64,000 nt of DNA from Bugula neritina (lineage: Eukaryota; Animalia; Bryozoa), in contig OZ037768.1 in assembly GCA_964035545.1 (NCBI GenBank), positions 23,531,319 through 23,595,318 on the forward strand, in the 5' to 3' direction. This document shows, one piece after another, positions 32,767 through 63,878 of the stretch. The number at the start of each line of letters is the position of its first letter. The first letter of the stretch is position 1. A program made the translations under genes and the position numbers. The notes beneath the pieces were generated by a model that made no database searches, was not told the DNA's origin, and saw only the letters and a list, made by a program, of their open reading frames with translations.

Positions 32767-34230
32767 AACCAACTATTATAGGAATCAATGACAATCAGCA
32801 CATTTGAACTCCTAAAACAAAATAGTACACTTTCAGCTAGCTCAAGCAACAGCACAACCATCTAACATAATTTTATGAGTGATATTAATTATGATTATGT
32901 ATCAATATTAATAAATATCAACTACTATTACAGTAATACTATTACTCTTAGTATTAGTATTACTATTAATATTAAATTTAATATTATCATTGTGATTATA
33001 CTAAAAACAGCTATAACTATTACTATTAGTATTAGCATCACTACGACTATTAGTATTAGTATTAGTATTACCATTAGTATTAGTATCGAGGATATCTAAG
33101 TCTAAAAACTAAAAGTAAAAGCAGTTAAAACTTAGACTTACAGTTAGTGAGTTAAGGTATGACTATGAGTATGACTATGACTATGAGTAAAAAACTAAAA
33201 GTAAAACTAAAACTAAAAGTAAATGCAGCACTTCTGTCACTTAATCTTAAACTTACAGTTACTGTGCACCAGGGTTCACTCTAGACTCTAGTCACTGGTG
33301 TCTACTGGCTAGCATTTGCTGTTACACTTACTGTTAGTGCCACTGTCAGACTTAGTCTTAGTGTGAGACGTCACAGAAAATCAGTTTAAGTTTTAGTTTG
33401 AATTTCACAGAAATGAAATTCAAATTCAAATTGACTTTGAGTTTGAATTTTACTGATTACTCAACTTTGAGATTTAATATCAACCCCCAGCTCTAAGTAG
33501 TTAAAATTTTAAAAAATCACCATGAGCTTGAAATTGTCCGACTTGATCATTGATTAAACTAGTTTATTAAGGAAAATTTTATAAACATCTGGCTAATTCA
33601 GTTATTCGTAACTAATAGCTGAGTTTTACCCACGACAAAAATCTTCTAGCCTGTAGTATTATTAATATCTATTCTTACCTTCACAAAGCAAAGATTGCTT
33701 GTTCTCTTTACTCACACTTGTTCTTCGTCATTAGTTTGACATAAAAATACAAAAACACGTCTTTATTTTAAAGGGCGTTTTTGCATATCCGTTAGGTGCA
33801 GGTGCAGAACCATTTGCCTAACTCAATTAAGCTTAGCAGTTCTGTAAAAATAAATGTACAACTGCAGTGCCAGTGAACGCAGTGGTTTTAAATAAGTTAT
33901 AGGTGTTTTTAGTTTAGATTATGCTATAAGAATTAGTTACTAATAGTTATATGATATATCGCAATCTTAGTAAAATTCAGTAAATTATTCACTCTCGAAA
34001 ATGCATTTCAACTGTTTTAAGAACTTACAGTCATATACTAGTGTATGAATTACTATCGAAGTTAGTTTATTGTGAACATAATTACGTTTATGTAGCAAAC
34101 TATCGTTATGCATAAAATAATTAATCTTATTTTGTATTTATCACGGATGTTTGCTATTTGTAACTATTTTTATTAGATTATTAAATGTGTTGTTTAACTT
34201 TATTTGCAGCAGTCAAGAGTACATACTCTA

Positions 34231-36952
34231 ATGGAGGGCCATAAACCTTATAAATTGTTTATTAATGCTGATGATTTTGGATACTGTCCCAACAGAAATT
34301 CTGCTATTATCGATTGCTTTAAGGCAGGAGCAATTACAGACACTAGTTTGCTGGTGAACAGCTCCTATGTGTTAGATGCAACAAAGCTGGGTCTGGAACA
34401 CAACCTACCCATGGGCAAGGACTTCTCTTTCTCATTGCATGCTATTTTTGTTTCTCAAATTGAATGTAAATTATGTATGTATATTAATAGGCATTACTTT
34501 AGCTGTTTAGAAAATATAAGACAGCATGCTTATGAGTTATACCGTGTGTATGCACATTTCTAATACTGCTTTGTCAAATTAGAGTAGTCGAAAAATGTTC
34601 ATTTGGTCATGGAGCAAAACATAGATGTTACAGCCAATCATGACAGAATATTTGGGAGACAATTTCTAACATTCTTAGCCCATAACTTGGCTCATTAAAC
34701 TAGACATTAAAGATCTATGCATGTGCAAACATTTTCAACTTTTGATTTGTTTAAAAACTAACATGAAATAATATTATGAGAGGCAGTATCTGTGATTTTG
34801 GTGCTGAATGCTAATCAATTAGCGTGAGGCTGTCTTTATGAATATGCTGCTAAAGAATGAAGGGCTTAAAAGACTTTTTGCTCTAAGCCTGTATGTTATG
34901 ATATTTTAATGTTTTTATTGTTTATATAATAGGCTGTAGTTGCCTATAATGCATCATAAAGTATAAAAGTTTTTTGCAAGCATCTAAACTGAATTATTTT
35001 TTTATAGGGTTACACTTCAATATCAGTGAAGGGAAACCTGTGTCTACGCCATCGGAAATCCCATCTCTATTGTGTGACGGGGAACACTTCAGGGGGAAAG
35101 CTGGGGTGGTGGCTGCAGCAGAAAATGGATCTCTGAAAACAGATGAAGTAATTTTCACATCATATTTCTCTGGGTGTTTCCAGTGCATGAAGCATAACGT
35201 GTTGAATAAATAACCAAAAGCATAGTTTTCCGAAGTTTTTTGTATTGAATTTTCATGCTCTTAAGTTAGAAATCTCAAGATTCATTTTATGATAATTTTT
35301 TTTGTTTTAAAATATTGAGAAAAGAATTTATAAAATTTGTGTTTTGCAATTTTTTATATAGATGAGGTTTTTAATTTCTAAGCAATTTTTTTTCTATTGT
35401 GTAAAAGATATACAAAACTAGATTAAGTATTGCTCTAGTCATGGGTGGCAGCCACAGTGTATGTTGACATATGTTTTTTATCAAAACAGGTGAAAAGGGA
35501 ACTGAGATCACAGATTGTAAAGTTTAAGTCACTCACTGGCAGATTGCCTGCAAGAGTAGACGGCCATCAACATGTTCATGTGTTCCCAATAATAAGACAG
35601 GCTTTTGCTGAGGTAACTTGGCTTTTGGGTTCTTAGCATGTAAATACAAATGAAGGTGTTACAAAATTAATTTGCTTCTCTGTTTATTAACATCAAAATG
35701 AAGTTGAGGTCTAGCTTTATGTGTCAAGTTTGTACTGCAGAATTCAATAGACGCTCTTTATAAAAAACAGCTCTACAATACTTATTGGAAATTGTCCTCT
35801 TTCTAAAAACTGCAAATAAATTTATAAATCAAGACCCATAAGAACTGCCACTTGGCTTCTTTCTCTGTGTTTTAAAGTCATTTCAAACCCTAACATTTAT
35901 GCATTGCAACATGTTGTATCGTAGGTCTTGTCTGAATACGGAGTAAAACTGACACGACTCCCAATTGGTCTGTATTTGGGACCAACCGAGATGTTACCAG
36001 AAGAGTTTCTGCAGAAAGTCAGAGAATTTGCTAAGGACAGTCAGGAGTTGTTCTCTCAACATAATCTCAGGTTTTTTTTGTAATACAATTATTGTGTAAA
36101 AATGTGAATACACTTTGTGAATATAATGTGAATTTTGTGCTGAATTTTGGTATCATTTACTTTTGCTACCAAACCTAGGCAATAATTTCACTTAAAGTGT
36201 GTTTCTATTGATAAATATTGTGAGTGTGCTTAACATTAATTCAGTCCAGAATATTAATAGTAAATAATTTAGTTATATTAGAGGAAAGCTCAAGCTCTTT
36301 GGCCAAGTATCTAGAAAATTACATCAGTTTAGTCCAGCGTTCTAAATACAATCTTATTATCTAATATTTTTCAAATATACTTATAAATCATACAAATTTG
36401 AAAGATTATAAATTGAAAATGTACATCAGTTAGCTCTCTGCTTTTCACGTTAAAATTATTAAAAGGTTCTTTAATCATTCATATTATATTCTTGTTATAC
36501 TTCATATATGATCTTCCTGTATTAAACAATGCAGTTGTTGGTGAAGTTTCATTATCCTATTACTGTAGACATCAATTGAGAGGGCGACTCCTAAAAATGT
36601 TCATCAATTAAGAAGACAACTCCTTACAACACTTTGCGTATGTTGCAGATCATCAGATGCGTTCATTGGCTGCTCTCTAGTAAAGATGGAGGAGAATTCT
36701 ACATCTCAGCAAGTGCTGAACTACTTTCAAGTTGCCATGGAGTCATTACCAGCTAATGTAGAGACTGTTGAATTCATGGTTCACCCAGGCTATCCTAATG
36801 AGGCTGAAGACGGGGGCTGTGGAGTGGGGCCCGACAATTATTCAAAGGATATAAGCAGAAAAATTGAGCTTAACTTTTTACTCAGTGATGATTTGAAAGT
36901 GTATTTTGATAGTAAACCATTAACAATACAGTCGTGGGAAAGAAGCCTTTAA
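34231..36952 (+). CDS. YDJC: YdjC/ChbG-family carbohydrate deacetylase
   Basis: Motifs INADDFG, GLHFNISEG, DGHQHVH, EFMVHPG. Exons 34231-34414 (GC donor), 35008-35147, 35490-35612, 35925-~36070, 36649-36952. Confidence 0.93.
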
Positions 36953-38907: not shown

Positions 38908-41900
38908 ATGGGCAATAACAACAGTAGGAACACCCTAAGATATGGTTTGTATTACTGAAAGAACATCACTATTGTTATTCTTTAAATTTCATTTGACATC
39001 AATACTATTATTCATTAAAAGATCCTTTTTTGGACATGAAATTGTTATTCACAAAAGCAGCTCAACATTTTTTTGTATTTAAAATCTCTTGTGACTCAGT
39101 ATAATTCAACGGCCATACTGAAATATTCTGCAATCTCTTTCATGTTTGAGAATTGTATATACATGTCCATGTTGATATGCAAGTCTGCAAATTCTCTCAA
39201 CCACCAAGTTCACAAGTTATTTCTCATATAGATAGAATATATGTTTGCAGCATATAAGCAATTTTATACAGGAAAGCATTGAAATGTAGTTTTGTCTCGT
39301 TTTCTACAGAATTGGGATGTAATGTTTGGTACAGGCACTCTGGGGAGGAAGAAATGGACAAAATAGAAGATGTTAATCTCTCGATGTTGCAGTTTGTACC
39401 TGCAACTGATTACTCTAAGATAGATGCTGGAGAACATTATATCACACATATGTATATAGAGTCAGCACATGTCATGCCTCCTCTAGATGTTGTTGCTCCA
39501 CGACTCACTCATCTCACCTTGTCTTTTCTATCTCCAGACCATGATTTAAGCTGGTAGGCCTAGAGCCTTATTTATATGTAAACAAATCTGAAAAAATGGT
39601 TTCAACTGTTTTTATTGTTGCTTTTACCTGTTCGTTTTATTTATTGTTTTTGTTTACAGTTTGAGCCGTCTGCATCATTTGCGAGTTTTGGAATGCAGAA
39701 AATTTTCGAGGTGGTTGGAGAAACTGCCTCCTGAAATATACAACATTCAGTCTCTTGAAGAGTTTCGGGTTGGCTCCTACAACCGAAACTTTCTTCCAAA
39801 GGGGTAAATACTATGTAAATTGGTAACTCGATCTTCTTATTAATTGTATTTTCTTAAAATTCATTTACCAGACTATTTGTTTTTTTATAGGTTAAGGAAG
39901 TTGCAACAGTTGGTCACTTTGCAAATAGACGGAAGCTATTTAAAAACTTCACCTTCTGAAATTGGCAAGCTAACATCTTTAAAGAAATTGATCATTGAAG
40001 CACCAAATGTTAAAACCCTACCCAAAAGGTTACATTTTCATAGTACCCTATTGTAGGCTAAATCTATGCTATATTTTATCCGACCAAGTGTTGTGTGTTG
40101 GATTTGGGAATATTAAAGAACTTAATTATTATTTTTGTCCAGTTTTAAAGGTTTGAAGAATCTGGAGACTTTGCAGTTTACAAAGTTGAGCTTTTCTCGA
40201 GGGTTTCCAAGCCTAGTAACATTTGTGTCTCTAAAGGAACTACATTTTCATTTTTGTCACTTCCCTCGGCAACAAGGCGGGTAAGAAAATATCATGTCAA
40301 GGTCAATCGATGTTGATGCATCTCTTGTTGTACTACTAACTTCTTCAAATCATTGACTTCAGTCTAACTACAGTAATTGTATATAGAATGTACCTCATCT
40401 ATCTTACTGTACTTGTTCATCAGGTTTAGTAGCAATTGGCAGAGTAATACTTGCGCACTACTCTGTCCTACTCTAAATAAAACTCACGCAAGTTTATAGT
40501 CGCTATTCCTGTGAGAAACCCCTGATGGAAAGGGTTTTTGTTTTAGCGGGCTAAGGACTTATTTTAAATGAGACACAGGAGCAATTATGACTGGATGCTC
40601 TTCCTAACATTACCAATGGCCTTTACTGGGGATCGAACCCATGACCTCGTGTTACTAGGCGAACGCTCTAACCCCTAGCCCACGGCTGCTCCTTAGATAA
40701 ATAGATAAATAGGAAAATATAGGGGAGTGTGTCAATCTGTGAGATAGCTGTATGTAGTTAACACAAATATATAACTTTATTCATAAGTAGTGCAACAGTT
40801 CTATTGACTTATAATATCTAATACTTCAATTATAGGAATGCCAATATTCAGTTAACCTTTTCACATCGCTTACTATTACTATACTTACTATACTACACAT
40901 TTTTTTTATTTGAACGTTGAGTAAGTTGAAAATTGACTGTCTACCAGATAGACACATTTGTCCTAATCTTTATGCTTTGTTTTTTTTTTCTCAGCAATAA
41001 CTCAGTTTGAGCTACAAATAGCTGTTTTACTTGCTTAAAACTTTCACACTGTTTCAGTTAACCAAAATACAGCCTTGTTTAGTTGAAGTTTCAATTTAAT
41101 TTTATTTCAAATAAGTTTAATTATGAATTCGAAAAGTCATTAAATAGTTGTGAATAAAGTGATCGTAACCAAAGACAATTTCTGGCTGTGATTAAAAATG
41201 TGTCTTCTGCAGTTCTGGGCCCCGATTGCCAAAAGAGGTTTCCATGCTGACTGGCCTCACTTCACTTAGTCTCATCGACTGCAATGTTGGCAGTCTACCT
41301 GAGAGGTAAATCTAGCAACAAGAGTTTTGTAGTTGAAGTTGTTATATATCCATAAGTTTTATACAATAAGGAGTGTGGGTGGCACATAACATTTAACAAT
41401 CTGGATAACAGCTTCACAATGTTTGATAGTCTACATGATAAATTTGAAATTTACAGCTTAGTAGAACAAGTTCGATGCGACTTCAATTTCTTGCGTCACT
41501 GAATAATAGTGAGTTTAAATATGTTTAGTATTAGTAACTATTCCATCAAGTCCAATACATCTTTTTGGGACTATTTTGTAGCGCGAGAGCTTTACAGAAT
41601 CTGGAAGTGCTAAAGATTACTACGCATGATTTCTTTGAAGAATTTTCACCCGTGATATCAGAGTTTAGGGCTTTGAGAGAATTACGTTTGACAGCATATG
41701 GGATATCCCATCTTCCCATGAGGTAGCAACTTGATTAACAGAAGTCCTGTCCATTATTGAATACTAGCAGGAGTTTAGATGTCAAAATATCCCATCGGTT
41801 TTATTAATCTGTACAAGTTGTTGAATTCCACAAAAAATTTAATGTCAACTAGATATGGTTTTATTTTATGAAATAGTTTTCAATATAACTGCTTACCATG

Positions 41901-44900
41901 ACAACCTGCCTGACTACATGAACATCAGCTTACAAAGGAACTGTGTGCTGGGCATTCTTGTCAAGTGAAAATTGTATTGCTAAAAATTTTCAGTTTATTA
42001 TTGAATTTCATTTATTTTATATTGTGTTATATATCACCATTTCAGCCTACAAAATCTTGAGCAGCTACACACACTGCACTTCTGTTCTATGAATTTTCGA
42101 TCTGGTCTGCCAGAAGTTATTTCACATTTGCCATCTCTTAAGCGGTTGATGCTAAACAGATGTGGTCTTGCAGAACTTCCAATGAGGTAATAGTTTAACA
42201 TCACCATGTTTTGATAATTTATTTGAAAAATATTCTGATCTATACTTGTTACTAAAAAGGTCGTGTCCAACTGTTTGCCTTTTTCATGTTTTAGTTTGAA
42301 AAGTTTGAAAAATCTAGAAATACTCGACATTTCGGCAAATGATTTTCAAGGAAAACTCCCCTCTGTCGTTTATACACTCATCCAATTACAAAAATTAGAT
42401 GTAGGGGACAACATGCGTCTCACAGAGCTAGGAGCAGATCTGATGAAACTGAGCAAGCTCACAGAGTTGAAATGTGAAAATTGTTTCAATCTTGAGTTTC
42501 CAGACTATACTGTGTGCCAGCAGGGTATTGATGCCATCAAGAAGTTTTACAGGGACTGGGATACTGCAGCTGGCACAGGCGTGACTGTTCTACCAGTTGC
42601 TGTCGTAGGCAATACCCTGGCTGGTAAAACCAGTCTTGTGTTGAGTTTAAAAGAGGAAAAGCAGGTCCTTACATTTCGTGATGAAACGTCGCCTTTGGAT
42701 GAGACTACAAAAGTGTTTGATTTCCACAGTTTGCACCTATCAGATTCAATTGTCAGATTCATTGATTTTGGTGGCCATGAAGTATATCATATGGCCTATC
42801 AGCTAACAATCAATAAGAATTGTGTCCCATTGGTTGTTGTTAATCTAGACGAATATCAAAAGTTGGCAAGTAGCCGAGGCGCCAGAGAGGCAACGAGAAG
42901 GTTGTGCTTGGATTGGCTGTCCCATTTTTATTTAGCATGTCCACATCTGGGTCCGCCAATTCTTGTGCTTTCTCACAAAGATCTTCTCTCAGATGTCGTG
43001 TTCGAGGAATGCAAAAGTCAGTTGCTTAGCTCAGCTGAAACTCTTCGAGTTGAGTTGCTTAAAGAAGAGAACAACATGTCTGAAGGCACAAGCGATTACT
43101 GCCGAATTGTTCATCTGTGTGATACCACTAAACCCTTGTTTCATCCAGATGACATATTTGTTTTTGGTAATGAGCACGAAACAAACGCCAACATTCAAAG
43201 CCTTAGGCAATGCTTTGAAGGGCGCAGTAAGTTCAAAAGCCCTAACCCTAGGTTGTGGGAGCTAGTTGGTTCTTACTTGGAAGAACAACGATCCAAGCCG
43301 CTTATCTCCCTGTCTCAAATAAAGTCTGAGTTTCCCGATGAAAGTGGCATTGAAATCATTTTGAAAACTTTTCACAACAGTGGAAAGATTCTGTGGTTTG
43401 ATCACCTATCAGATTTGCGCGAATATATTTTTCACCAAATACCGGCAATTGTAGAAATGGTTGCTGTTCTTTTTCATCATGCTGGTGAAGAAAGATGGAA
43501 AAATCGAGAAAATGATTTTGTTCCTTTTAAACATAAAAATCGCAATGTAGGGAAAATTGCCTACAAAGACATGGTGAAAAAATTTCTTGTGGAGGGTATT
43601 TTAAGTGAAGCTATTTTGGTAAATCTACTCAAACTAGAGACAGATTTTCCGGTTGACGTGGCTTTGAAGCTACTTACCTCTTTTTGCATAATTCATGGGC
43701 CAATAACACAACAGGGCTGTGACGCTTTCATCCTGCCCTACTTTTCTAAGCAGCTCAAAGACCGAGAATGGAGAACTCATGGCTATCTGCAGCTTAGAGC
43801 AGATGTTGTGTTTGAGGGCCTTCCTCTGCCCGAATATGTTTACCAGTTGATTACTGTAGCGTTTTTGAATCATTTTTCAAACCCCACATATGCCTTGAAA
43901 GCCGCCAACAATGGAGCTACCGCTCAGTTTGGAGGATGCACTGCTCATCTGGTACACGATTGCTACTCTAAAACTATCACCATTCAGGCCTCTACCCCTG
44001 TCGAAGCTGTCGGTAACTCATGGAGTATTTTGGTGCAGCTCCTAGAACTTATTGTAAGACACACAACTAAAGTTTGGAAGGCATGTCGACCAGAAGTGTT
44101 AATCTACTGTTCCCACTGTCTCTTTATCAAAGCTGAAAATCCTGACTACCACGTCACACCTTCCTGGTTTCAATCCCAATTAAATATGACAGACATGCCA
44201 GTGTTTAACCCACTTGAGCCTGTGGCCTGCGAAAATTCTAAACTCGATAGCAACGGGCAGTTGACTGTGCCCTCCATCCTTCGTTTCCCTTGTGAGTAGA
44301 TTACTTTATCATCTTGTACAACCAGATGTTGAAATCATAAAATTAAAATAGGTTATAATATGAAATGCTTTTAACACACTCTGTTGAAGGAAGTTTGTGT
44401 CAGTTTCTTGGGTGTAATTTGTGAAATTATTTTCGTTCTTTGCCCAATTAGCTTGTGCTTTATAGGTTATTTCCTGGAAGGAGATGAAGTGTCAAATCTA
44501 AAGGGCTATCTCAGTGCCCTGGAGAACACTCTTCCATCCAAAACAAGTTAGTGTCAAACTGTTGCCTGCCCTTCAGTGCTATGGGACACAAACTGCAATG
44601 TTTCCAGTACTATTAGTCATTAACTACAGTCTACTGGCATCTAGAATAGTTTTCTTAGTTTGGTTATACACACTTTGAGTTGGTTGATACCAGGTTCCTG
44701 CAATTATTATTATATTGCATATTATCTCATTATTGGCAAGCTGCTTCGTTTTTTATTCTCTTTTTCTTAGTCAATAATCCACTTGCCTTTTCTAGACCTT
44801 CAAATAACTACTTTTCATTTATATTTCATAAGGTTCTACATCAACCAAGACAGGTGAATATTGTGACCTTGATGATCAAGATGACCTCGAAAATGTTGAC

Positions 44901-46826
44901 TGCACGCATGGAAATGAAGAAGAAAGTGACATCTCTGACATCGAGGAGGCGGGTTATGCTGACTTTAATAAAGCTGACCTTGACCCTTATGTCTTCAACT
45001 TGATGCAACTCCAGCCAACCAGCAAAAGGAATATCAAAAAGCTGTTTAACAACAAGAAGGCGGTAAAACTTTAAATTTTTATATTCCAACTTGGATTATT
45101 ATATTCCTATATTCCGTGATATTCTTTGTTGGTTGTGCCATGAAAACTTTCTATTACTGGTAAAACTCCTCCCCCCCCAAAGTTATCCCTGTATACTAGG
45201 TTTAATAGCTCTTATCTACAGTACTGCTATGCCAACCCTGCATGGTGTTTGTTTTTCTTCTACGCTTCTTTTTCTCTCAGGTGTACGAGATGAGTGACCC
45301 TGTTAGAGGTCGTGCGATGATCATAAACATTGAGAACTTTTACAAAGATGGCCGACACCTCCCGGAGCTGACAAGAGAAGGCTCTTATCTCGACTATCAA
45401 AACATTCGCAGACTGTTTCAAGATATGGCATTTGATATTGTAAAGAAGGACGAAGAGATGTCAGATCTGTGCAAAAACGTTTGTATCCAATAAATAGAAG
45501 CATGATCAACACAACCAGACCAAGTTCTATTTTTATATTGATTTTTAATAGAAAAACTGACTATAATTAAGCATGTTTGACCAGCAGTTTAGCTAATTTA
45601 AACTTTTATAAAAACATGGATTAGCTGTAAAGCTGATGCTAAAGTTAATGAAGAGCACACCAGTTAATAGCCTGTTAACTGTTAACACTGACTTTGGTTT
45701 CATTCACTCACAGGAGATACTAGCCGAGATTAAAAAGGAGATGGCATTGTCCGTCCACAAGACACTCGGGATGTTCGTCCTTGTCATCATGTCTCACGGC
45801 TCAGCCAATAACATCTTTTATGACAAGTGCTGCGTACCTGTGAACATTATGACTGAAGTGAAAGACTTGCTTTCGGCCAGTCGCTTTCCAGCTATGAGAG
45901 GAAAACCTAAGCTGATAATACTTCAGGCATGCTCAGGCAGTGAGTCACTGTTTCTGTGTGTTGATGAGTCAGCTTTATACTTCATATTATATACTGCTTA
46001 TATACTACATACTATATACTGTATATGTATACTGTATATTGTGTACTACATACTATACTACATGCTATACTGTATATTATGTACTGTTCCAGGTCAGGTT
46101 GATCTTGGTGGTGCCACGATCAACACTCAAACTGCTTTGCCAACTTCTACCATCTCAAGTGATGACCCTAGCTCTGTTGACGTTGCAACGCCATCTGAAC
46201 CAATCATTCCCTCAGCTGGGCCAGTACCCTCAGCTGGGCCAGTACCCTCAGCCGGGCCAGTATCTCCAGCTGGGCCAGTTACAGAGCTATCAACTTGTAA
46301 AGAAGCGAATATTGACGTTAGCCGACTGGATTACCTGGATGTTGATGATTTCTACATCATGAAGTCAAGCACAGAATGTAAATATAAATAGCTGTCTTTT
46401 ATTAGATGTATACAAAACTTACTATTGGTTAATGTTCCACTAACTTCTTTCCTAAACTCACCTTTCCTCTCATTTAAAGCATTCGGAGCTGGGAGGGATG
46501 ACTCATATGGCTCATGGTTCATCAGAATTCTGGTCGCAACTTTCTACAAGCACAGCTGTCACAGGGACGTAGATCAGCTCTTTCTAATAGTGAGTCAGTC
46601 TGTTCTCTCTTTACTACGGCCTGCTCTCATTGGTCAATTCTTTCTAACCAACAATGTGACTGGTTGTGCATTGTTCTGGTAGATACAGGAGAGAGTTAGA
46701 CAGGCGAGTATTGGGTACATGAAGAAGACTGGCTTAGCTGTTGGAGGAAATGTTCCTTCCAGACCAGATTGTACTTTCACTCATGGCAGGAAACTGTTCT
46801 TCTTCCCGAAGGTCAACGAAAAGTGA
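38908..46826 (+). CDS. Myristoylated LRR-Roc-COR-caspase fusion protein (Roco-caspase), copy 1, about 1448 aa
   Basis: 16 phase-compatible GT-AG exons: 38908-38944, 39310-39553, 39660-39803, 39891-40028, 40143-40280, 41213-41305, 41582-41722, 42046-42186, 42295-44291, 44466-44546, 44833-45062, 45281-45478, 45714-45939, 46093-46377, 46480-46589, 46683-46826 (4347 nt in total, open). N-terminus MGNNNS. LRRs such as LKNLEILDISANDFQGKLP. Roc motifs G1 GNTLAGKT, G3 DFGGH, G4 SHKD. COR-like FHNSGKILWF...YCSHC. Caspase YEMSDPVRGRAMIIN, TREGSYLD, VIMSHG, KPKLIILQACSG, GSWFIRIL, KLFFFP. Confidence 0.88.
40481..40692 (-). mobile_element. tRNA-derived SINE in Roco-caspase intron 5
   Basis: Minus-strand head GGAGCAGCCGTGGGCTAGGGGTTAGAGCG...GGTTCGATCCCC with Pol III A and B boxes; absent from the equivalent intron of copy 2 (~62235). 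Confidence 0.75.
46208..46279 (+). repeat. Coding 18-bp tandem repeat (PSAGPV x4) in the caspase inter-subunit linker
   Basis: ccctcagctgggccagta repeated about 4 times inside exon 14. Confidence 0.9.
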
Positions 46827-47908
46827 CCTTTCTTGTAGTTTTAGCAGTTCATTGAGAATTACTGCTGAGGTGAAAGCAAACCAAACCTGGTCACTATACT
46901 TCACTGTAATAAACAGTCCACATTGACAATTGGTACATATATATAGTCGTCATATGTACATGGCAATGCTTATCTGGTGCATTCATGATACTTCTATTAT
47001 ATGGTGCCAATATCTTTAGAGCTTATAGTGCTATTTTCTATATTCTAAAATTCTAACCAACACTAAATGCACTCTATTTCACCCCTAGTTTTATTAGCTA
47101 CATATTTAATGTTATATAATTTGTGTGTTGCTTAGTTTTTATAGCTATACAATTCATATGCCATATTTATACTGTTTGGTTACTTCTAAATATAAACATC
47201 TATAATACATAATCCTACGGTATATCTACTTGTATCCCTCACAGGGATAGTGACTATGAACTTGCGCTAGTTTACATCTGCTCGTATATTGTTATAATTT
47301 CCAGAATTGTGGGTTAGTGTGCAATCAAGTGACTGTTATTTACTATGTTAGAGAAACTTCGCCAGGATAATTCGAGTTAACACTAATATATTTTATACAC
47401 AAAGATACATCACAAAAACTACAGTTACACAAATACATTCAGCTAATTGATACGGTCTATACAGTTCACCAGTCTAAACTCAACTAACTAAAACGCGGGA
47501 AGCTATCACTACTAAAACTGTCAGTCCTGCCGATTGGTTGTCCGCTGTTCCAGGTCATCTCAATGACCCCGTGCTGCACTCGTGGGGGAAATAACATTTC
47601 CCCGTTATTACGCTGGTAGCTCCACCACACCGCCCCCACCAGCAGAAAGCCCTCTTTCTAATACAAAAAACATAATATCAGTAGACCAAAACATAAAAAT
47701 ACAGACAGGTATATATATAACAATGACAGACATAATCATTATAACAGTTGCGGCATATACAATTGGTTAGCTACGGAGAGAGAAGTAGCACTAGCTGTGG
47801 TAGTGGACAAGGAAGATGAGCTGTCGAGTATTTACATGATCGCAGCGTTAGTCAAGCACTTCCAGGAGGGTAAGGCTTACGGATACATTCCAGGAAGGAG
47901 AACCAGAG

Positions 47909-48691
47909 TCATGGCTTGGAGAGCCGGTGTTTGGCTTGACGTGCACGTAGCTTCTGTTTTATCTTGCCTACGGAGCCTTTTAATTGATAAAGTCCTGTCG
48001 TGGTGTTTAATAGATCTGGGGCTAGTTGGGTGAACTCGACCTGTAACCGAAGGAGCCGCTCTTCTACAGTAGCCAGGCGAGTACGATCTGGAGATGGGGT
48101 CGGGACCTTACAAGGGGGAGGTGCTATCTCCTCTTCTGTGTCAAGGTAGGTGAGTTTTTCGGGGGTATATACAATCTGGGGTCGGTCCGATACCATCGAG
48201 AATTGTTGTTGAGCATATTTCAGCACATGCTGGAACCCGGAGGTCAAAACGGCCAGTACCATCGATTTCTTCACCAAGGGCCGTATCAGTGCTAAAAATT
48301 TCGGGTATAGATCAGCATCTACGACGTAGTTTTCTCCCGGGAAGCATCCAGCTGCTCGATGTCTAATGAATGGGTAGGGATAGACGTCGTGGTGTCCGCA
48401 TGGACAGAATGTCAGTAAGAAATGAGCATCCACGTGTAGTCTCAGCGAGCGGTGAGACGGACTATCCTCATAACAAATTTGGCACTGCGTGCTTCCTTTG
48501 GGTCCCCATGCAGCTTCTATTTTTCTCTCCATCTCTGGCAACACCCACCGCCAGCGGCGGCGCAGTGGCCCGGGTAGTCCGCCATTGGTATTCTCCTCAT
48601 GGTGTGGAGCGAGGAGTGCTCGATTCCGTACCCTGGTTGTAGCGGGTCGAGTGTAACCTGAAAGAGTTTCAACAGCGTTGGTAAAACACAC
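47909..48691 (-). CDS. Accessory ORF of the Gypsy element: C2H2-like zinc finger plus C-terminal coiled coil
   Basis: Uninterrupted 260-codon ORF between integrase and the 3' LTR; CQIC-x12-HVDAH followed by CPCGHH; heptad-like RLATVEERLLRLQVEF...LKGSVGKIKQKLR. True start codon uncertain. Confidence 0.6.
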   Translation of the reverse strand: MCFTNAVETLSGYTRPATTRVRNRALLAPHHEENTNGGLPGPLRRRWRWVLPEMERKIEAAWGPKGSTQCQICYEDSPSHRSLRLHVDAHFLLTFCPCGHHDVYPYPFIRHRAAGCFPGENYVVDADLYPKFLALIRPLVKKSMVLAVLTSGFQHVLKYAQQQFSMVSDRPQIVYTPEKLTYLDTEEEIAPPPCKVPTPSPDRTRLATVEERLLRLQVEFTQLAPDLLNTTTGLYQLKGSVGKIKQKLRARQAKHRLSKP

Positions 48692-49292
48692 TGTAGTGTT
48701 GTCGGCCTTAGACAGCCTGACAACTGCTCGTTCGGTTAAACACTCGCAGAGATTTACGGTAGTGAATAGTTGGAAGAGAACACATACTGCAGTGAGATTG
48801 TGAAATCTCTAAGTCAATCCGAGTTCCTACCACTGTAGTTCACTAGCCTATCTCCAGCTCAATTGACTCAGTCGAGTCGGAGCTGAGTGATGCAATCTAG
48901 TTTCCATATCAAAAACATAGTTAACTCACCCCACGATCCGGTATTGTATGACATACTGAATGTTTGCGAATGGTTTGTACTAGTGACTAGTGGCACGTCT
49001 GCTCTTGACTGCATCAGCGTAAGAAAAGATCGAGCAACGTGGTTGGGGTGCGTGACTAGGACTTTGCACACCCGGCCGATGAATTTTATTTCTAGTTCCG
49101 CCGATGTAAAAGTTGATATTTCCGTGGTGCTGACAACTCCCGCAATTGCTCAATACTTTTCCCGTACGGTTCCCCTCTAGACTTTCATACGTGCCGCTCT
49201 GGACGCAGTCACATACGAAGTCCTTTAGATAGGCTGGGGGTTGTCTCGTACGCTGTCCTCGCTCTAGGGGAGGTGGCGCACTTACTGGTGGA

Positions 49293-52200
49293 CTAGTAGG
49301 TGCCACTGCCGGTGCTTCTAATTCCCCGGTAGTGGCCATTTCTTCTAACTCTCCAGATGGAGCCCCTCCCTCCGTGGGGATTTGCACTTCCGGAATCGGC
49401 TCGGTTTCTGAAAGTGATGGTATCAGACTTGGTATAGGAGGGTAAAAGTGGTCGCTCGTCTCGTACTAAGTCCTCTTCTCGTGGAATGACCACTTCATAC
49501 TCGGGTTCATGCCGCCGTCGCACACGCGTTGTCGTCTGCCTCCTGGGCTCCAACAACGGGGGGGAGGGGGGGGCTTCTCCCACTGCGTCTAGGCTAGCCC
49601 GATATGGCTTGAAGCGAGCCTCATTTTGGATGGACAATTGTCCTGAGCGCTCGATCTTGTAGGTATGGTTGGGCATAGGCTCGACTATCACGTAGGGTCC
49701 CACGAACTTAGGCTGTCATTTAGCCGCCTGCCCGCGACGCCTACGATAGTTGACCATCCACACCCAATCTCCTGTCTGATAGAGGGGTGGTTCCTCGGAA
49801 TCCTCGCGCCGCACCTGCCACTGCTTCTCCCGCAGCATTTCAAGTGCGACCCTCATCCGTTCCACTAGTTCACTGGCATACTCGTGAACCGAGTTGTCTT
49901 GCTCTGGAACGTGGTAGGTAAGATGGTCAGAGACCCGAGTCTCTCTCTCGAGCATCAGGAGGTTTGGGGTCTCACCAGTACTGGTGTGTGGGGTGCTACG
50001 GTATGCGCGCATGACTTGCGGCAACACCATGTCCCATTCCTCCGGACTGCGTCCGAGGAGTAGACTCCGGAGCGCATCGCCTAGCATCCGGTAATTGCGC
50101 TCCACCACCCCGTTACCTTGGGGATGGTAAGGGGTGGTCCTGCTCTGATTTACTCCCCAGAGGCGGCAAAGGTCGCTCATCAGTTGAGACTGGAACTGAG
50201 CGCGTTGGTCAGAGTGTATCTGTTCGGGGAGGCCGAAATAACAGAATGCATGTTGGTCTAGCACCCTGGTCACTGTCGGAGCTGACACATCTGGGATTGC
50301 CAGAGCGTCCGCCCACCTGGTGAAGTGGTCGGTTAATACTAAGATCCAACTGTTGCCTCTGGGGGTTAGGAGCATGGGTCCGACCAGGTCGACAGCTACT
50401 ACTTGCCGCGGCCTTCCAGCATATAACCTTCGCCGTCCCGCTTCACCAGGGAGACGGCCATGCTTGCTGGCCTGGCAGATTTCACACTGTTTTACTCTGA
50501 GTTGGACATCACGCCCCATCTTGGGCCAATACCACCGGAGTTGCAATTTGGAGATCACTCTCTTGACTCCTGCGTGAGCCTGTTTGTGAGTGTCCCAAAT
50601 TAACTCACGGCGTATGGCACTGGGGCAGACTACCCTCTTCCTCTCCGGGTGTCTGCCGTTGGCGGCTAAAGAAATGGTCAGCAGACCATTTTGCCCGATC
50701 CTCAGCGAGTCCCAACGTTGGCAGAATAGCCGAAACTCGGCGCATTCCTGCCGTAGTTGTTCCTCACTGGGTCGTCGTCCTTCCTTTTTGGCCCGATATA
50801 TGTCTGCCACTACTCCAGGCAGCTCTTCTTGAAGCTTCTTCAGCTCCCGGACATTATCGGCCAAAACAGGGTTGGCGGGGAGGTTTCGTACAACCTCCGG
50901 GGACTCGTCAACCTTCTGTTTGAGTTGACCCTGGTCCCAGTCAAACTGTGCTCCGTGGTGAGCCAGTGTCTCTAACTCACATCGTGGGGGACCTCCATCC
51001 CTCTTTTCGATGTTGAGACACTGTTTACAACCTTCATCAGGTCGCCGGCTCAAACCATCCGCATTGCTGTGCCTCCTACCCGGCCGGTGTTCGATCCGGC
51101 AGGAGAACTCAGCTAGGATTTCGAGCCACCGGGCGACCTGACTGGATGGCTCTGCTCTCTTGCACAACCAAATCAGGGAGGCATGATCCGTACGCAGCCG
51201 AAACTTCCTGCCATACAGGTATGGTCTGAAGTGCTTCACTGACTTGGTTACTGCCAGCAACTCCTTGCGGGTAGTTCAGTAATTTCGTTCAGTGGGTGAG
51301 AGAGACTTGCTGTAGTAAGCTACTACTACTTCTCGGCCTTCCTGCACTTGGGACAGCACAGCGCTAACATTCTGGTCACTGGCGTCTGTGTCAAGGATGT
51401 ACTCCAGAGTGGGGTCTGGGTAGGCCAAGATGCGTGCCGTAAGTAGGCAACCCTTGAGGCGGTCGAACGCTCGTTGTTCGACTGGGGTCCACTGCCACGT
51501 CACTCCCTTTGCGGTGAGCCGGTTTAACGGCTGTGCTATCCCCGTAAAGTCTGGTATGTATTGCCTGTAATACCCCACCAGACCCAAGAAAGCCCGGAGT
51601 CCGGTCAAATCTTGGGGGGGTGACCCAGTCTTTTATCGCCCGTACCTTCTCGGGATCCGTTGCAACGCCGTTTCGACCGACAACGTGCCCCAGGTACTTG
51701 ACCTCCGGCTGCAAAAGAGTGCACTTGGAAGGTTTTAGCTTCAGACCGGCACCTTTGAGTCTTTCGAAAACCTCCCGCAGACGACTGACGTGTGTCTCAA
51801 AGTCTGGGGAAATCACGATGACGTCGTCGAGGTAGATCAGCAGTGTTTTCAAGTGGAGTCCGCTGAGGACTTACTCCATCAGCCTCTGAAAGGTGGCCGG
51901 GGCGGAAGTTAACCCGAAGGGCAGCACCTTCCACTTCCACAGTCCGTCCCGTGTGATAAACGCCGCCTTCTTCTGGGCGTCGGGACTCAGAGGGACCTGC
52001 CAGTAACCGCTCAACAAATCTAACGTACTGAAGTACTTGCTGCCGGCTAGGGCGTCCAAGGATTCATCATTACGAGGTAGAGGGTAGGCGTCCTGTATGG
52101 TCACGCTATTGAGCTTGCGGTAGTCCACACAGAACCGCCAACTTCCGTCTTTCTTCCGGACCAAAACGACCGGCGAGCTCCATGCACTGTGGGCTGGCTC

Positions 52201-54401
52201 TATAAGGCCGCGGTCCAGAAGATCCCGGACTTGTCGGCTGACCTCCTTCTCCGGCCCCAGCCTGCGCGTGGGTTGCCGAATAGGGACTGTCCCTGCAGTC
52301 AGCGGTATTTCGTGTCTGACAGCTCTGGTCAGTCCCGCGCCATGATCTCCGCTGCTGAACACATCACCGTAGTCGCGTAGCAACTTCGCCATAGCCTGGC
52401 GTTCCTCATTGCTCGCACAGCCACCACAAGCTGTTTCCTATAACTCCTTGATGTGTGGTGGGACAGTCCCCCGACCCTTTGACGGGCGCCGAGGGGGGCT
52501 CTTCCGTCGCATTTCCCAGCGACGGGCCCACGTCTTCTTGGACAGAGTGGAACCGGCCCAGCATGGATCCAGCTGGTAGTTTTATGAACTCTGTGAAGGG
52601 GTTTACGCACTGCACCAAGATCTCTCCTCGCGCAGTCAACTGGTTCAAACTGCTATCGAGCTGGATTCTTTCGTGCCGCCTTCTACTACCCCGAGTCCAG
52701 AGATCCGGCTATTGTTCACCCTGCAGTGGATAGTAGCCCGGGAGTGGCCCGGTATAGTACAGTTCCGTACTACCTGCACGCCTCCCACTAGAAGGCGGCC
52801 GGACATCACCATTGCAGACTTGCTAAAGTCAATGTGACATCCGTGCCGTTTCAGAAACGGCATCCCGAGGATAGCGCCTTCTTTGAGCTGACTGACGATG
52901 AACGTCTCTTGGATAGCTTGATCTCGGACGCATCCCGTCAGCTCAATTATACCATAAAAGGGAATGCACGACCCGTCAGCCAGGGTGCCATACTCCTCCT
53001 CATACGGTTCCATCTCGCCCCTGACCCTAAGGCTGAGGGTATCGAAGAGTTGGCGACTTATGAGGTTCGTGGTACAGCCCGAATCAAGCAGGAAGGTAAC
53101 AGCTTTACCCGCTACTTTGCCGGGTAAGAAATAGCTATTTCCATGGGGCTGTACCGGTACTCTCTCTTCGTGCCGTGCTCTTGCAGGGAACACCTCCCTC
53201 GCTATAGGTCGGGAAGGCGGTCGTTTGGAACGGTGGTAGAGTGTCCTCAGAGGTGGGAAAGGCAAGTTTCCTGTCGCCTGTACTGGTTCCCATTCTGATT
53301 CTTGGGCCGGAAGCCCGTCGAATCGGTTGTGGAGTGGCATAGAGAAGGTAACAGCGGGGCGGGGCCCCTTACCTGTCCGCCGTGGTTGTCGCCACTCCTG
53401 GTTGTCAGCACGCAGTACCCGTCTGGGTGACCTACGTTTCCTCTTCCCTGGGGGATTCATCGTCAGCCCGCAGGAGGCGGGAACATCTGCGGGCCGCGGT
53501 AGTTTAACCCCGGAGCAAGAAGAGGTCAATACCTGCAGAAATGTCCTAGGTTTCCACATTCCCAGCAAAAACTGACTGCTTCCCGCGGTGGCGGCGCCGG
53601 CGCCCGCGGAGGCTTGTAGGCGGTACCTACTGGGGTTTGGTGTGTCAGTGCTGTTACCAGTTTAGCCAACATGTCGATCAGTTGGGCGACCTTCGGTGCG
53701 GCAGTTAACTGTCCCACAACAGCGGCTGCGGGAGGCGGAGCCTCCCAATCGACCGGAGCGTCTGTGGACTCTATCTCTACCTGGCCGGAGGCCTCGCGAT
53801 TTCTATGCATCTGGTTTGCCAGGAAATAATTTTCTATTTTTGCCAGAGCGCCTTCGACTGTGGTAACTCCCCTAGCTAGAAATTGATGGTGGAGTCCCAA
53901 GTCGTTGACGGATTGCACAAAGGCGTCAAAGGTATACCTCTCACAGTTAGCTTGGGGCAGATCACTATACGCAATCTGCGCCAGCTTCATCACCGTGGCG
54001 GCATGTTCTTGTAGCGGGGTGTGGGAATCACGCCGCAGCCTTTGTAGTCGGGCCCGGGCGTCTATGGCAGAGATGCCGAAACGGGCCCATAGAGAAGCAA
54101 AGATACTATCGATGTCTGGTCCTAACCCATAGGGCTTGGCCTTATCCATCAATGACATTCTGAGCTTCAGCAGGGCCACCCTGGGTTGCCCCTGGGCGAC
54201 ATCCATCACGTCGCTAAACTCTTATATGAATTGTTCCACTTCCTCTTCGCCCGTGAAGGTGGGTGCCTTTAACCGGTAACGGTCTTCGTTCAGCTCACTC
54301 GGAACTTTTCGCTCTTCTACTACTTGATTCACAGGAATAACATCATCTCTACGCTCACCTTCTACCGGCTGTGGGTGTGTTCCAGCATCCTCAGTCTCCA
54401 T
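49293..54401 (-). pseudogene. Gypsy gag-pol, broken by stops and frameshifts
   Basis: ORF track pieces 53526-54209, 52645-53568, 51871-52392, 51391-51852, 51276-51608, 49716-51260 and 49293-49703 form one gag-PR-RT-RH-IN series across frames. Confidence 0.9.
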
Positions 54402-60658: not shown

Positions 60659-63600
60659 ATGGGCAACAATAACAGTAAAAACACGCTAGGACATGGTTTG
60701 TAATACTGAAAATACATCATTATTGTTATTCTTTTAAAAGTCATTTGGCATCAATATTATTATTTATTTGAAAGATCATTTTTAGGCATAAATACTAATA
60801 CTTCATTTACAAAATTAGCTTAAGAGTGTTTTGTAATTGAAATCCGTTGTTACTCATTATAATTTAAAAAAGGTTATGTTTGACAATTGTACATGTCCAG
60901 TGTTGATATCTAAGTCAGCGAATTCTCAAAATGTAGTTCACTAAGGATTGTTGTTTCTCAAATGAAAACGTTTACTTGTAACAAATATGCAATTTAACTT
61001 AAGAATTAAATTAAAATGTAGCTTTGTCTCCTTTTTTGCAGAATTGAGATATAAAATTTGGTTCAGGCACTCTGGGGAGGAAGAAATGAACAAAATAGGA
61101 TTTACTGGGAGATGGATGTTGCAGTCTGCACCTGTGACTGATTACTCTAAGATAGATGTTGGAGAACATTACATCACACATATGTACATAGAATCAACAC
61201 AGGTTATGCCTCCTTTAGATGTTGTTGCTCCACGACTCACTCATCTCACCTTGTCTTTTCTATCTCCAGACCATGATTTAAGCTGGTAGGCCTAGAGCCT
61301 TATTTATATGTAAACAAATCTGAAAAAATGGTTTCAACTGTTTATTCATTGTAGCTTTTACCCGTCCCTATTGTGTATTGTTTATGTTTACAGTTTGAGC
61401 CGTCTACATTATTTGCGAGTTTTGAAATGCAAGAATTTTTCGGCATCGTTGAAGAAACTGCCTCCTGAAATATACAAAATCCGGTCTCTTGAAGAGTTTA
61501 GATTTGGCTCCAACCATTTAGATTTGTTTCAAAATGGGTAAATAATATATAAATCGCTAAGTTGATGTTTTTAATAATTTTGTTTGTTTGAAAATACATT
61601 GATTAGATCATCTATTCTTTTATAGAACAGAAGAGTATCAACAGTGGGTGACTTTGCCAATGGGCAGAAGCTATTTAAAAACTTTACCTTCTAACATTGG
61701 CAAGCTAACATCTTTAAAGAAATTGGTCATTGAAGCACCAAGTATTAAAACTTTACCAAAAAGGTTGCATTTTTATAGTGCTCCATTATCGACTGAATTT
61801 ATGCAATTTTTTTGTCAAATCAAGTGTTAAGTGTTGGATTTGAGAAAATAAAATGGTTTCATTTTTATTTTTGTCTAGTTTTAAAGGTTTGAAGAATCTG
61901 AAGACTTTGCAGTTTAAAGGTTTAAATTTTTCTTGTGGTTTCCCATGTCCGATAACATTTGTGTCTCTAAAGGAATTACATTTTGACTCGTGCCGGTTCC
62001 CTCAGCCACCAGATGGGTAAGGAAATGTTTCAGTAGATATGATGTTGCTCGTGTAGCAGCTTTTGCTATACTGGTAGCTCCTTTAACTCATTTACTTCAG
62101 TCTGACTACAGTACTGTAATTGTATATAATGCATCTCTACTATCTCAAAGTACCTGTTTATGTTTTATCTGGTTCCTGACCCTCAGGTTTAGCAGCAATT
62201 GACAGAGTAATAATTCTACACTATTCAGTGGTACTCTAAATGATAAATATGATAATAATTATAGGAGAGTGTGTCAATCTGTGAAATAGCTAAGTTCACT
62301 CTTTAATTAACCCAAGTATATAACTTTCTTCATAAATAATGCAACCGTATTATTGACCCATCGTGTGGAATTACTCAATCATCAAAGCCAGTAGTCAATA
62401 AAAACCTTTTCACATCCAAAGCTAAGCAACCAGCTAGCACATTTTATCTATTCATTTGATTGAGGCTTTTCATGGAGTAAGTTAAAATTTAATTACTTTC
62501 CACATGTTTGGATTCATATTCAAAAGAAGAATTTATCATAAATGCATGTTTTAATTTATATTAGATTACAAACCTGACAGTGTTGGCTGTTATAAACATT
62601 TTGCAACTTTCACAAGACTCCTTCCTAAATGCTGATTTGACTGTCAACCAGTGAATGATCTACCTGAACAGAAAGTCAAACTGGTTCTAATCTTAATTCT
62701 TTTTTTTTCAGCAATAGCTCAATTTAAACAATAAATTTAGCTGTTTTAGTCGCTTAGAAATTTCATACTGTTTTCAGCTGATCAAAACACAACCATGGTT
62801 AGTTGAAGTTTCAATTTGATTTTATAAGAATAAGTTTATTTATAATTGCGAAAAGTCAATAAATAGTGTATTGAAGAGCCGTCAATGCAGTGACTGTAAC
62901 CAGAGATAACTTCTGGCCGTGTCTTCTGCAGTTCTGAGCCCCAGTTGCCAAAGGAGATTTCCATGCTGACTGGCCTCACTTCACTGAGTCTCATTTACTG
63001 CAATGTTGGCAGTCTACCTGAGAGGTATGTATACGTGAGAGATTAGTCTAACAACAAGGTTTTTGTAATTGAATTTGTTTTATAATTTTTATCTAATAAG
63101 AGGTGTGGGTGACATTTAACAATCGGAATAATAGCTTCACCATTGTTGATAATCCGCATAATAAATTTCCATTAACAGCTTATTAGAACAAATTCAATAT
63201 GACTTCAGTTTCTTGGCAACTTATATCTCAAATTCAAAGTTTTAGGGATACTGAGTTTTAGAATTGTAGTGAAATTTTACGATAATAGTTTAGCGTGTGT
63301 TTTACCTAGAGTTGTCTTTTCAAATTTTATACTTATTTTCATAATAGCTTTATGATTTATGATCATATAAATCGATCCCGGCTGAAAATCAGAACATATT
63401 CCGATGTCTGTAAGCGCGACAATTTATCGGAATGACCGACAATTTGTTGGTGTGTTCGACTTTCGAATGTGACCGATAGAAGTTTCCAGAAGGGTTTTTG
63501 TCCCTGTATATAAAGAGGTGAGCTCACAGAGTAGATCAGTCTACCACTGGAGCTTGCAGGGTACAGACCTACCTATACACACTACTTTTCATACTACAAT

Positions 63601-63878
63601 AAAGATTCTTCTCTCAAGACTACAACTCTACCTGGTTTCTTCTATATTGGAGTTATGCTCCCCACTTAATTTCATTCTACCCACAAAACTACTACAGTAT
63701 TTAACCATTCAATCAACTTTTTGAAACTATTTTGTAGCGCAAGAGCTTTACAGAATCTGGAAGTGTTAGAGATTACTACGGATGATTTCTTTGCAAAATT
63801 TTCACCCGTGATATCAGAATTAAAGGCTTTGAAAGAATTAGACCTGGTAGCTCATGGAATATCCTCTCTTCCCATGAG
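60659..63878 (+). CDS. Roco-caspase paralogue, copy 2 (N-terminus and LRR exons; runs off the window end)
   Basis: MGNNNSKNTLGH. Exons 60659-60695, 61042-61285, 61394-61537, 61626-61763, 61879-62016, 62932-63024 and 63738-63878 have the same sizes and phases as copy 1 exons 1-7 and all are open. The Roc and caspase parts lie outside the window, so the fusion is inferred for this copy. Confidence 0.85.

What the first reader, a model, noticed from the sequence alone, without database searches (positions are those of the whole stretch)
38908..46826. Single-chain LRR-Roc-COR-caspase: candidate GTP-gated, adaptor-free death/immune receptor
Seen: 16 exons splice into one open frame of about 1448 aa carrying LRRs, a Roc GTPase (GNTLAGKT, DFGGH, SHKD), COR and a full caspase p20+p10, with no CARD, DED or death domain. 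Established: Roco proteins (LRRK2, MFHAS1/MASL1, DAPK1, bacterial Roco) couple Roc nucleotide state to COR-mediated dimerisation, and initiator caspases are activated by induced dimerisation. Inference: ligand binding to the LRRs could switch the Roc-COR dimer state and activate the fused caspase directly, collapsing an NLR/apoptosome-like sensor-adaptor-protease pathway into one polypeptide driven by a GTPase rather than a STAND ATPase. I know of no characterised animal protein with this architecture, but I could not run a search.
Basis: partly seen in the sequence, partly recalled or inferred. Interest (0 to 1): 0.93.

Follow-up and report, generated by a model that had tools for sequence, protein, structure and literature searches.

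The report
Bryozoan LRR-Roc-COR GTPase fused to caspase
This is a real, spliced and transcribed gene of a moss animal (bryozoan) that joins a variable leucine-rich-repeat surface, a Roc-COR GTPase switch and a complete death protease (caspase) in one protein, so it looks like an untested, one-piece sensor-and-executioner of cell death or immunity.

Summary
Observation confirmed. Sixteen GT-AG exons give one 1448-aa frame: LRRs, Roc, COR-A/B, an acidic linker and a caspase with intact catalytic and Asp-pocket residues. RNA-type contigs from four studies show every junction from exon 6 to 16; one 721-nt contig runs from COR into the caspase. Three of four runs use acceptor 44854, not 44833 (7 aa shorter). 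The fusion is a family: at least 11 Watersipora and 3 Bugula proteins carry it, one Watersipora gene has the same intron positions, and a tandem paralogue starts at 60659. No death fold was detected between COR and caspase. The architecture is not unique: an amphioxus model has it, apparently by independent fusion (AU p=1.3e-5). Other invertebrate relatives end in CARD, Death, OTU or GT4, and bacterial LRR-Roc-COR-caspase was described computationally (PMC8195603). I found no paper on the bryozoan family and no experiment on any such protein. The 'GTP-gated dimerisation' direction is doubtful: the best-studied Roco becomes monomeric on GTP. Most likely an autoinhibited sensor whose opening frees the caspase. 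This scan already reported the family on other pieces of this genome.

The parts
38908..38944 (+). Exon 1; starts MGNNNS, an N-myristoylation-type MGxxxS start (predicted only)
39310..39553 (+). Exon 2; family-specific N-terminal cap region before the LRRs, no Pfam or Atlas match
   Evidence: 36% identical to P0204 aa 46-120, E 1e-11
39660..42186 (+). Exons 3-8; LRR exons, all phase 2-2, mostly 138-144 nt with two repeats each (exon 6 is 93 nt); exon 7 skipped in frame in one run
42295..44291 (+). Exon 9 (1997 nt): last LRRs, Roc GTPase (about 42575-43237; P-loop from 42608, Lys at 42626), COR-A (about 43247-43747), COR-B with conserved CxHC...C cysteines
44292..44465 (+). Intron 9, with in-frame TAG at 44297-44299 and ATTAAA at 44342; spliced out in RNA-type contigs
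44466..44546 (+). Exon 10, 27 aa; same size and position as in Watersipora P0204
44833..45062 (+). Exon 11, acidic linker with conserved SD(I/L/V)SD motif; alternative in-frame acceptor at 44854 used in three of four runs; no Pfam domain
45281..45939 (+). Exons 12-13, caspase large subunit: Arg of TREGS, His codon 45795-45797, Cys codon 45930-45932 in QACSG
46093..46377 (+). Exon 14, long intersubunit linker with short repeats and several Asp residues; start of small subunit
46480..46826 (+). Exons 15-16, caspase small subunit with conserved Arg (aa 1370) and GSWFI; stop at 46824-46826
46827..47100 (+). 3' untranslated region, AATAAA at 46908, covered by RNA-type contigs
60659..63878 (+). Tandem paralogue, exons 1-7 with identical sizes and phases, 78-91% nucleotide identity per exon; runs off the window end

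Best explanation
A cytoplasmic, probably membrane-tethered, single-chain danger sensor and protease of cheilostome bryozoans. Shown: one transcript-type joins LRR, Roc, COR and a caspase with intact motifs, and the family is expanded and old within bryozoans. Inferred mechanism: at rest the LRR arc folds back on Roc-COR and the caspase is kept inactive. A ligand or a perturbation acting on the LRR face opens the protein together with a change in Roc nucleotide state. This frees or repositions the caspase on its roughly 100-residue flexible linker, so that caspase domains of neighbouring molecules pair, cut their intersubunit linker and perhaps the conserved acidic linker site, and cleave targets after Asp, causing cell death or an inflammatory output. 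No separate adaptor is needed. Which nucleotide state is the active one is not known.
For: Splicing from COR into the caspase in four studies. Same intron positions in Watersipora P0204. At least 11 Watersipora and 3 Bugula proteins with the fusion. G1, G2 Thr, G3 and G4 nearly invariant; Arg, His, Cys and second Arg kept in the caspases. Among six Watersipora paralogues mean identity is LRR 0.39, COR 0.43, Roc 0.52, p20 0.58, p10 0.70, and LRR-motif counts run from 4 to 32. The same scaffold carries CARD (Lingula), Death, OTU, GT4-conflict or caspase in other animals, as the bacterial counter-invader systems do (PMC8195603). In C. tepidum Roco a nanobody in the LRR curvature is incompatible with the closed dimer and favours the open GTP state (PMC11052575). 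Forced dimerisation activates fused caspases (cited in PMC2575513).
Against: No experiment on any family member. No ligand is known. The one paralogue pair in the window shows no excess of amino-acid change (LRR exons pN 0.147, pS 0.257; exposed positions pN 0.22, pS 0.35). LRRs are only slightly more variable than COR. No infection-responsive expression was tested. I could not model a dimer.
Confidence: 0.55

Rival explanations
1. COR-dimer activation with GTP as the brake: the COR-COR dimer of the empty or GDP state brings two caspases together, and GTP loading keeps the protein monomeric and off. The protein would then guard GTP supply or GTPase-targeting effectors, or the LRR ligand would act by promoting hydrolysis.
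For: C. tepidum Roco is dimeric when empty or GDP-bound and monomeric with GTP (PMC5714945). The caspase follows COR-B, the dimerising part (PMC4104024). GTP binding lowers DAPK1 activity (PMC6337361).
Against: A constitutive closed dimer next to a dimer-activated protease would be dangerous unless geometry keeps the caspases apart. The long disordered linker would couple COR and caspase only loosely. Dimer state was not tested.
Confidence: 0.2
2. The family serves regulated developmental or self/non-self death (larval metamorphosis, polypide regression, colony contact) in response to host signals, not microbial detection.
For: No positive-selection signal in the pair tested. Transcripts are present in several runs not known to be infection experiments. 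Cyclic polypide regression in bryozoans is established knowledge (from memory).
Against: A large, multi-locus, tandemly duplicated family with variable LRR numbers and relatives carrying conflict-type effectors fits immune repertoires better than a developmental switch.
Confidence: 0.13
3. The Roc-COR part acts only as a scaffold or localisation module; the caspase is activated by an upstream protease that cuts the linkers, independently of Roc state.
For: Flexible linkers with many Asp residues and a conserved SD(I/L/V)SD motif could be cut in trans. Sequence matches to solved caspases do not separate initiator from effector type (CED-3, caspase-9 and caspase-3 score alike).
Against: GTPase motifs are nearly invariant across the family. 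A prodomain of more than 1100 aa and a long intersubunit linker are typical of proximity-activated caspases (established knowledge).
Confidence: 0.09
4. Two separate genes, or a minor read-through: most transcripts stop in intron 9 and the caspase is expressed alone.
For: TAG at 44297-44299 and ATTAAA at 44342 lie in intron 9. Several Watersipora RefSeq models lack the caspase. Logan contigs are not single molecules, and they differ from the window by about 2-5%.
Against: The 44291/44466 joint is seen in three runs and bridged in the fourth. The caspase exons have no own start: exon 12 opens on a splice acceptor. Two 'caspase-less' Watersipora models checked have caspase exons downstream on the same strand. 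The frame and introns are conserved across genera.
Confidence: 0.03

Closest known systems
Bacterial LRR-AP-GTPase(Roc)-COR-effector counter-invader proteins (Kaur et al. 2021, PMC8195603)
   Same: Same order: variable LRRs, Roc, COR, C-terminal effector; caspase is among the at least 24 effectors listed; multiple paralogues per genome.
   Different: Computational description of prokaryotic proteins. Here the gene is a spliced animal gene with a metazoan-type p20+p10 caspase. Its Roc-COR groups with animal, not bacterial, sequences in my sample.
Amphioxus LRR-caspase hybrids (Zhang et al. 2008, PMC2575513) and B. floridae BRAFLDRAFT_67388 / XP_002614028.1
   Same: XP_002614028.1 has LRR-Roc-COR-A-COR-B-caspase. 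The paper proposes LRR-caspase genes as direct links from recognition to apoptosis.
   Different: The paper does not mention a GTPase, and I could not confirm that 67388 is its model. The amphioxus protein is a predicted model nested among amphioxus Rocos with OTU and GT4 tails; a joint clade with the bryozoan genes is rejected. Its motif is QACRG, against QACSG here.
MFHAS1/MASL1-like group-1 Roco proteins, including Lingula LRR-Roc-COR-CARD and Trichoplax CARD/Death Rocos
   Same: LRR-Roc-COR core; nearest named relatives by sequence, features and fold.
   Different: They end without an enzyme, or in CARD or Death domains that would recruit a caspase; here the caspase itself is fused.
LRRK1, LRRK2, DAPK1
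   Same: Roc-COR coupled to an enzyme in one chain; same fold.
   Different: The enzyme is a kinase; single-copy conserved genes; about 15% identity.
NLR inflammasomes and Apaf-1/CED-4 apoptosomes
   Same: Repeat sensor, nucleotide switch, proximity-activated caspase: the likely working logic.
   Different: They use a STAND ATPase, C-terminal repeats, death-fold adaptors and a separate caspase. None of these is present here.
Brown algal LRR-ROCO candidate immune receptors (PMC11378527)
   Same: Expanded family; phase-2 LRR exons; LRR exon skipping; one group has a C-terminal peptidase.
   Different: One LRR per 72-bp exon there, two per 138-144-bp exon here. Their peptidase is IPR009003 (trypsin-like clan, from memory), not a caspase.

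Membership tests
Roco proteins | Roc GTPase domain with G1, G2, G3, G4 motifs | tested here: met
   Pfam below cut-off, fold match clear
Roco proteins | COR-A and COR-B directly after Roc | tested here: met
Roco proteins | GTP binding and hydrolysis with a monomer-dimer cycle | not testable with these tools
   needs biochemistry
Metazoan caspases (C14A) | p20 + p10 fold with His-Cys dyad and QACxG | tested here: met
   fold of the Watersipora homologue matches caspases, TM about 0.8 by target
Metazoan caspases (C14A) | Asp-specificity residues (two Arg and Gln of the S1 pocket) | tested here: met
   Arg 1160, Gln 1265, Arg 1370 align with family and CED-3
Metazoan caspases (C14A) | Proteolytic activity after Asp | not testable with these tools
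   needs an assay
Canonical initiator caspases (caspase-2/8/9) | CARD or DED prodomain | tested here: not met
   no Pfam hit on exon 11; the homologue's linker is disordered with one short helix; exon 2 has no match
Canonical initiator caspases (caspase-2/8/9) | Orthology of the catalytic domain to one named caspase | tested here: inconclusive
   CED-3, caspase-9 and caspase-3 score alike; no reference caspase tree could be built
NLR / STAND receptors | NACHT or NB-ARC ATPase | tested here: not met
   central domain is a Ras-like Roc GTPase
NLR / STAND receptors | Diversifying selection on the repeat surface | tested here: inconclusive
   one paralogue pair, pN below pS; LRRs least conserved and variable in number
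LRRK / DAPK | Protein kinase domain | tested here: not met
   none in any exon or homologue
Bacterial LRR-AP-GTPase-COR-effector systems | LRR-Roc-COR-effector order with caspase as effector | tested here: met
Bacterial LRR-AP-GTPase-COR-effector systems | Direct descent from the bacterial caspase-bearing proteins | tested here: inconclusive
   Roc-COR falls among animal sequences, away from the two bacterial rows; no bacterial caspase-bearing member was in the sample

The most novel reading that the evidence does not exclude
Bryozoans run a large repertoire of single-chain receptors in which a Roco GTPase does the job of the NLR ATPase and directly fires its own caspase: a GTPase-switched, adaptor-free inflammasome or apoptosome equivalent that arose separately in bryozoans, amphioxus and bacteria. 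It would be the first protease read-out of the Roc-COR cycle.
Probability: 0.4. Interest if true: 0.9.

Novelty: new variant of a known kind. Interest (0 to 1): 0.72.

Why it matters
If the mechanism holds, animals have a second way to build an intracellular death or immune receptor, with a GTPase in place of the STAND ATPase and no adaptor. It would give direct support to the idea that non-kinase Roco proteins (MFHAS1-like, brown algal, bacterial) are receptors. It also offers a test of an open question: whether the GTP monomer or the GDP dimer is the signalling state of Roc-COR, which is debated for LRRK2. A fused, dimer-activated caspase is a built-in reporter of that state.

Tried and rejected
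The joined 1448-aa protein was used only inside a script to check the frame and was not sent to any search or fold tool, so the joined search and a fold of the joined protein were left out. The full-length fold is of the natural Watersipora protein P0007. P0165 has no contig on record, so the amphioxus model could not be checked against DNA. The first tree run timed out; the tree used is a quick LG+G4 tree of 40 rows with long branches flagged. The Atlas gave only MFHAS1-like and bacterial Roco look-alikes below 0.9 and nothing for exon 2. Nine literature searches found no paper on a bryozoan or any animal Roc-COR-caspase; most subscription journals are not covered. Rejected: a hidden death fold in the linker; a natural caspase-less subfamily, at least for the two Watersipora models checked; bacterial contamination (15 spliceosomal introns, animal relatives); positive selection in the local pair.
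Full report
Observation. I rebuilt the model from the sequence. Sixteen exons from 38908 to 46826 are separated by 15 GT..AG introns and give 4347 nt in one frame, 1448 aa, with the only stop at the end. Pfam on single ORFs finds LRRs, Roc (E 3e-4), COR-A (E 6e-3) and Peptidase_C14 (E 3e-11). The Roc and COR scores are below Pfam's cut-offs, so I folded the exon-9 ORF. The model is confident (pLDDT 89.6, pTM 0.89) and its best matches are LRRK1, C. tepidum Roco, M. barkeri Roco and LRRK2. The caspase keeps the His-Cys dyad, QACSG, and both Arg residues of the Asp pocket.

One transcript. Seventeen public runs hold the stretch; their RNA status is the tool's guess. Four runs from four studies were laid on 41150-47100. 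Coverage falls on the exons, and the joints match every modelled intron from 6 to 15. In run X7 one 721-nt contig covers 44030-44291, then 44854-45061, then 45280-45448, with an 81-nt gap in the record that equals exon 10. It therefore bridges COR-B to the caspase. Three runs use the acceptor at 44854 and one uses 44833; both keep the frame (1441 or 1448 aa). One run also skips LRR exon 7 in frame. Caveats: these are assembled contigs, not molecules. They differ from the window by about 2-5%, so they are alleles, a cryptic species or a very close paralogue. Intron 9 holds an in-frame TAG and an ATTAAA, so a minor short form is not excluded.

Family. The closest named proteins are from the bryozoans Watersipora subatra and Bugula neritina, at 30-41% identity over the exon-9 ORF. 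The host is thus a cheilostome bryozoan, probably Bugula; I did not show the species. Watersipora has at least 11 proteins with this Roc-COR and a caspase in one chain (P0050, P0203-P0208, P0066, P0075, P0213, P0110, P0214) on several chromosomes, and Bugula has P0027, P0216 and P0223. The Watersipora gene for P0204 has the same plan: one large Roc-COR exon ending at the same Pro-Cys, a 27-aa exon, a linker exon, and five caspase exons with matching boundaries. Two Watersipora models annotated without caspase have caspase exons downstream on the same strand. A tandem paralogue begins at 60659 with the same exon sizes and phases. GTPase motifs and the COR-B cysteines are nearly invariant, and catalytic residues are kept in almost all members. 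Among six Watersipora paralogues identity rises from LRR (0.39) and COR (0.43) through Roc (0.52) to p20 (0.58) and p10 (0.70), and LRR-motif counts run from 4 to 32. The local pair shows no positive selection: pN 0.147 against pS 0.257, with exposed positions higher in both.

No adaptor domain. The full-length model of Watersipora P0007 (pLDDT 84.8) shows LRR, Roc, COR and caspase folds. Between COR-B and the caspase lies a low-confidence stretch with one short helix. Exon 11 has no Pfam match. The linker carries a conserved acidic SD(I/L/V)SD motif in both genera, a candidate cut or phosphorylation site (inference). The start MGNNNS, and MG starts in several Watersipora members, suggest myristoylation (inference).

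Wider relatives. B. floridae XP_002614028.1 has LRR-Roc-COR-A-COR-B-caspase. In a Roc-COR tree the window gene sits in a fully supported clade of 22 rows whose named members are all bryozoan, while the amphioxus protein nests among amphioxus Rocos that end in OTU or GT4-conflict domains. Forcing it with the bryozoan clade is rejected (AU p=1.3e-5), with the caveat of long branches and a quick tree. Lingula relatives end in CARD and another relative in a Death domain. So the LRR-Roc-COR scaffold swaps C-terminal outputs in animals, and a caspase was probably attached at least twice.

Literature. Kaur et al. 2021 describe bacterial LRR-AP-GTPase-COR proteins with at least 24 effectors, caspase among them (PMC8195603). 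Zhang et al. 2008 name amphioxus LRRs-caspase genes as possible direct links from recognition to apoptosis, without mention of a GTPase (PMC2575513). Trichoplax Rocos with CARD and death domains (PMC4104024), Aplysia Roco-TIR proteins (PMC9334734) and brown algal LRR-ROCO repertoires (PMC11378527) are recorded. A Roco review has no mention of caspase (PMC6337361). I found no paper on the bryozoan family and no experiment on any Roco-caspase.

Mechanism. Shown: architecture, splicing, intact motifs, conservation, expansion. Inferred: sensing, gating, death. My best reading (0.55) is release from autoinhibition: ligand-driven opening frees the tethered caspase to pair with a neighbour, helped by membrane tethering. 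The main rival (0.2) has the COR dimer activating the caspase with GTP as the brake. Non-immune death (0.13), Roc-independent activation (0.09) and two genes (0.03) follow.

Earlier notes of this scan. At least nine follow-up notes report the same family on other pieces of this genome, with counts of 50 to 109 genes. I confirmed the architecture, the bryozoan relatives and the amphioxus and bacterial parallels myself. I could not check those gene counts or the claimed scarcity of NLRs.

Limits. The joined model was not sent to any search or fold tool; searches were exon by exon or with public proteins.

Verdict. Real, and a new variant of a known kind: a Roco protein and a true caspase, not an NLR, working probably like one. 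The design has computational precedents in bacteria and amphioxus; the bryozoan family appears undescribed and all such proteins are untested. Interest 0.72.

Noticed in passing
window 60659-63878 (+): Tandem paralogue, exons 1-7, runs off the window. Its exon 4 has several LRR consensus positions changed at the start, and its intron 6 is 713 nt against 276 nt, suggesting an insertion.
   Followed up: partly
window about 47900-54200 (-): Broken LTR retrotransposon of Gypsy-type order (protease, RT, RNase H, integrase in several frames) between the two paralogues. Observed only.
   Followed up: partly
window 58120-59526: GC-rich ORFs on both strands without Pfam match; look like a second mobile-element remnant.
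   Followed up: no
window 34204-36952 (+): Spliced YdjC-like gene ending about 2 kb upstream of the Roco-caspase gene.
   Followed up: partly
window about 9990-12560 (-): Exon-like pieces that resemble a Myb-family gene (from memory), with a long tandem repeat in an intron that produces spurious ORFs.
   Followed up: no
window 45278-45335: Loose ends in all four runs show other caspase transcripts sharing the start of exon 12, that is further expressed paralogues.
   Followed up: no
window 41305/42046: In-frame skipping of LRR exon 7 in run X1 only; recalls LRR exon skipping in brown algal ROCO genes.
   Followed up: partly
P0213 (Watersipora, 1869 aa): Family member that continues past the caspase into about 650 aa with fibronectin type III-like Pfam hits; real extension or a merged model.
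   Followed up: no
P0170, P0185, P0186, P0190: Amphioxus-clade LRR-Roc-COR proteins ending in OTU and/or GT4-conflict domains, matching the bacterial effector list.
   Followed up: partly
L001:331-4560 (P0187): Single-ORF LRR-Roc-COR protein with a weak C-terminal CARD from run SRR17902662, placed near the bryozoan clade on a long branch; organism not identified.
   Followed up: partly
P0215 (Amphiura filiformis, 943 aa): Model with ZU5, caspase and kinase Pfam hits; the caspase lacks a clear QACxG.
   Followed up: no
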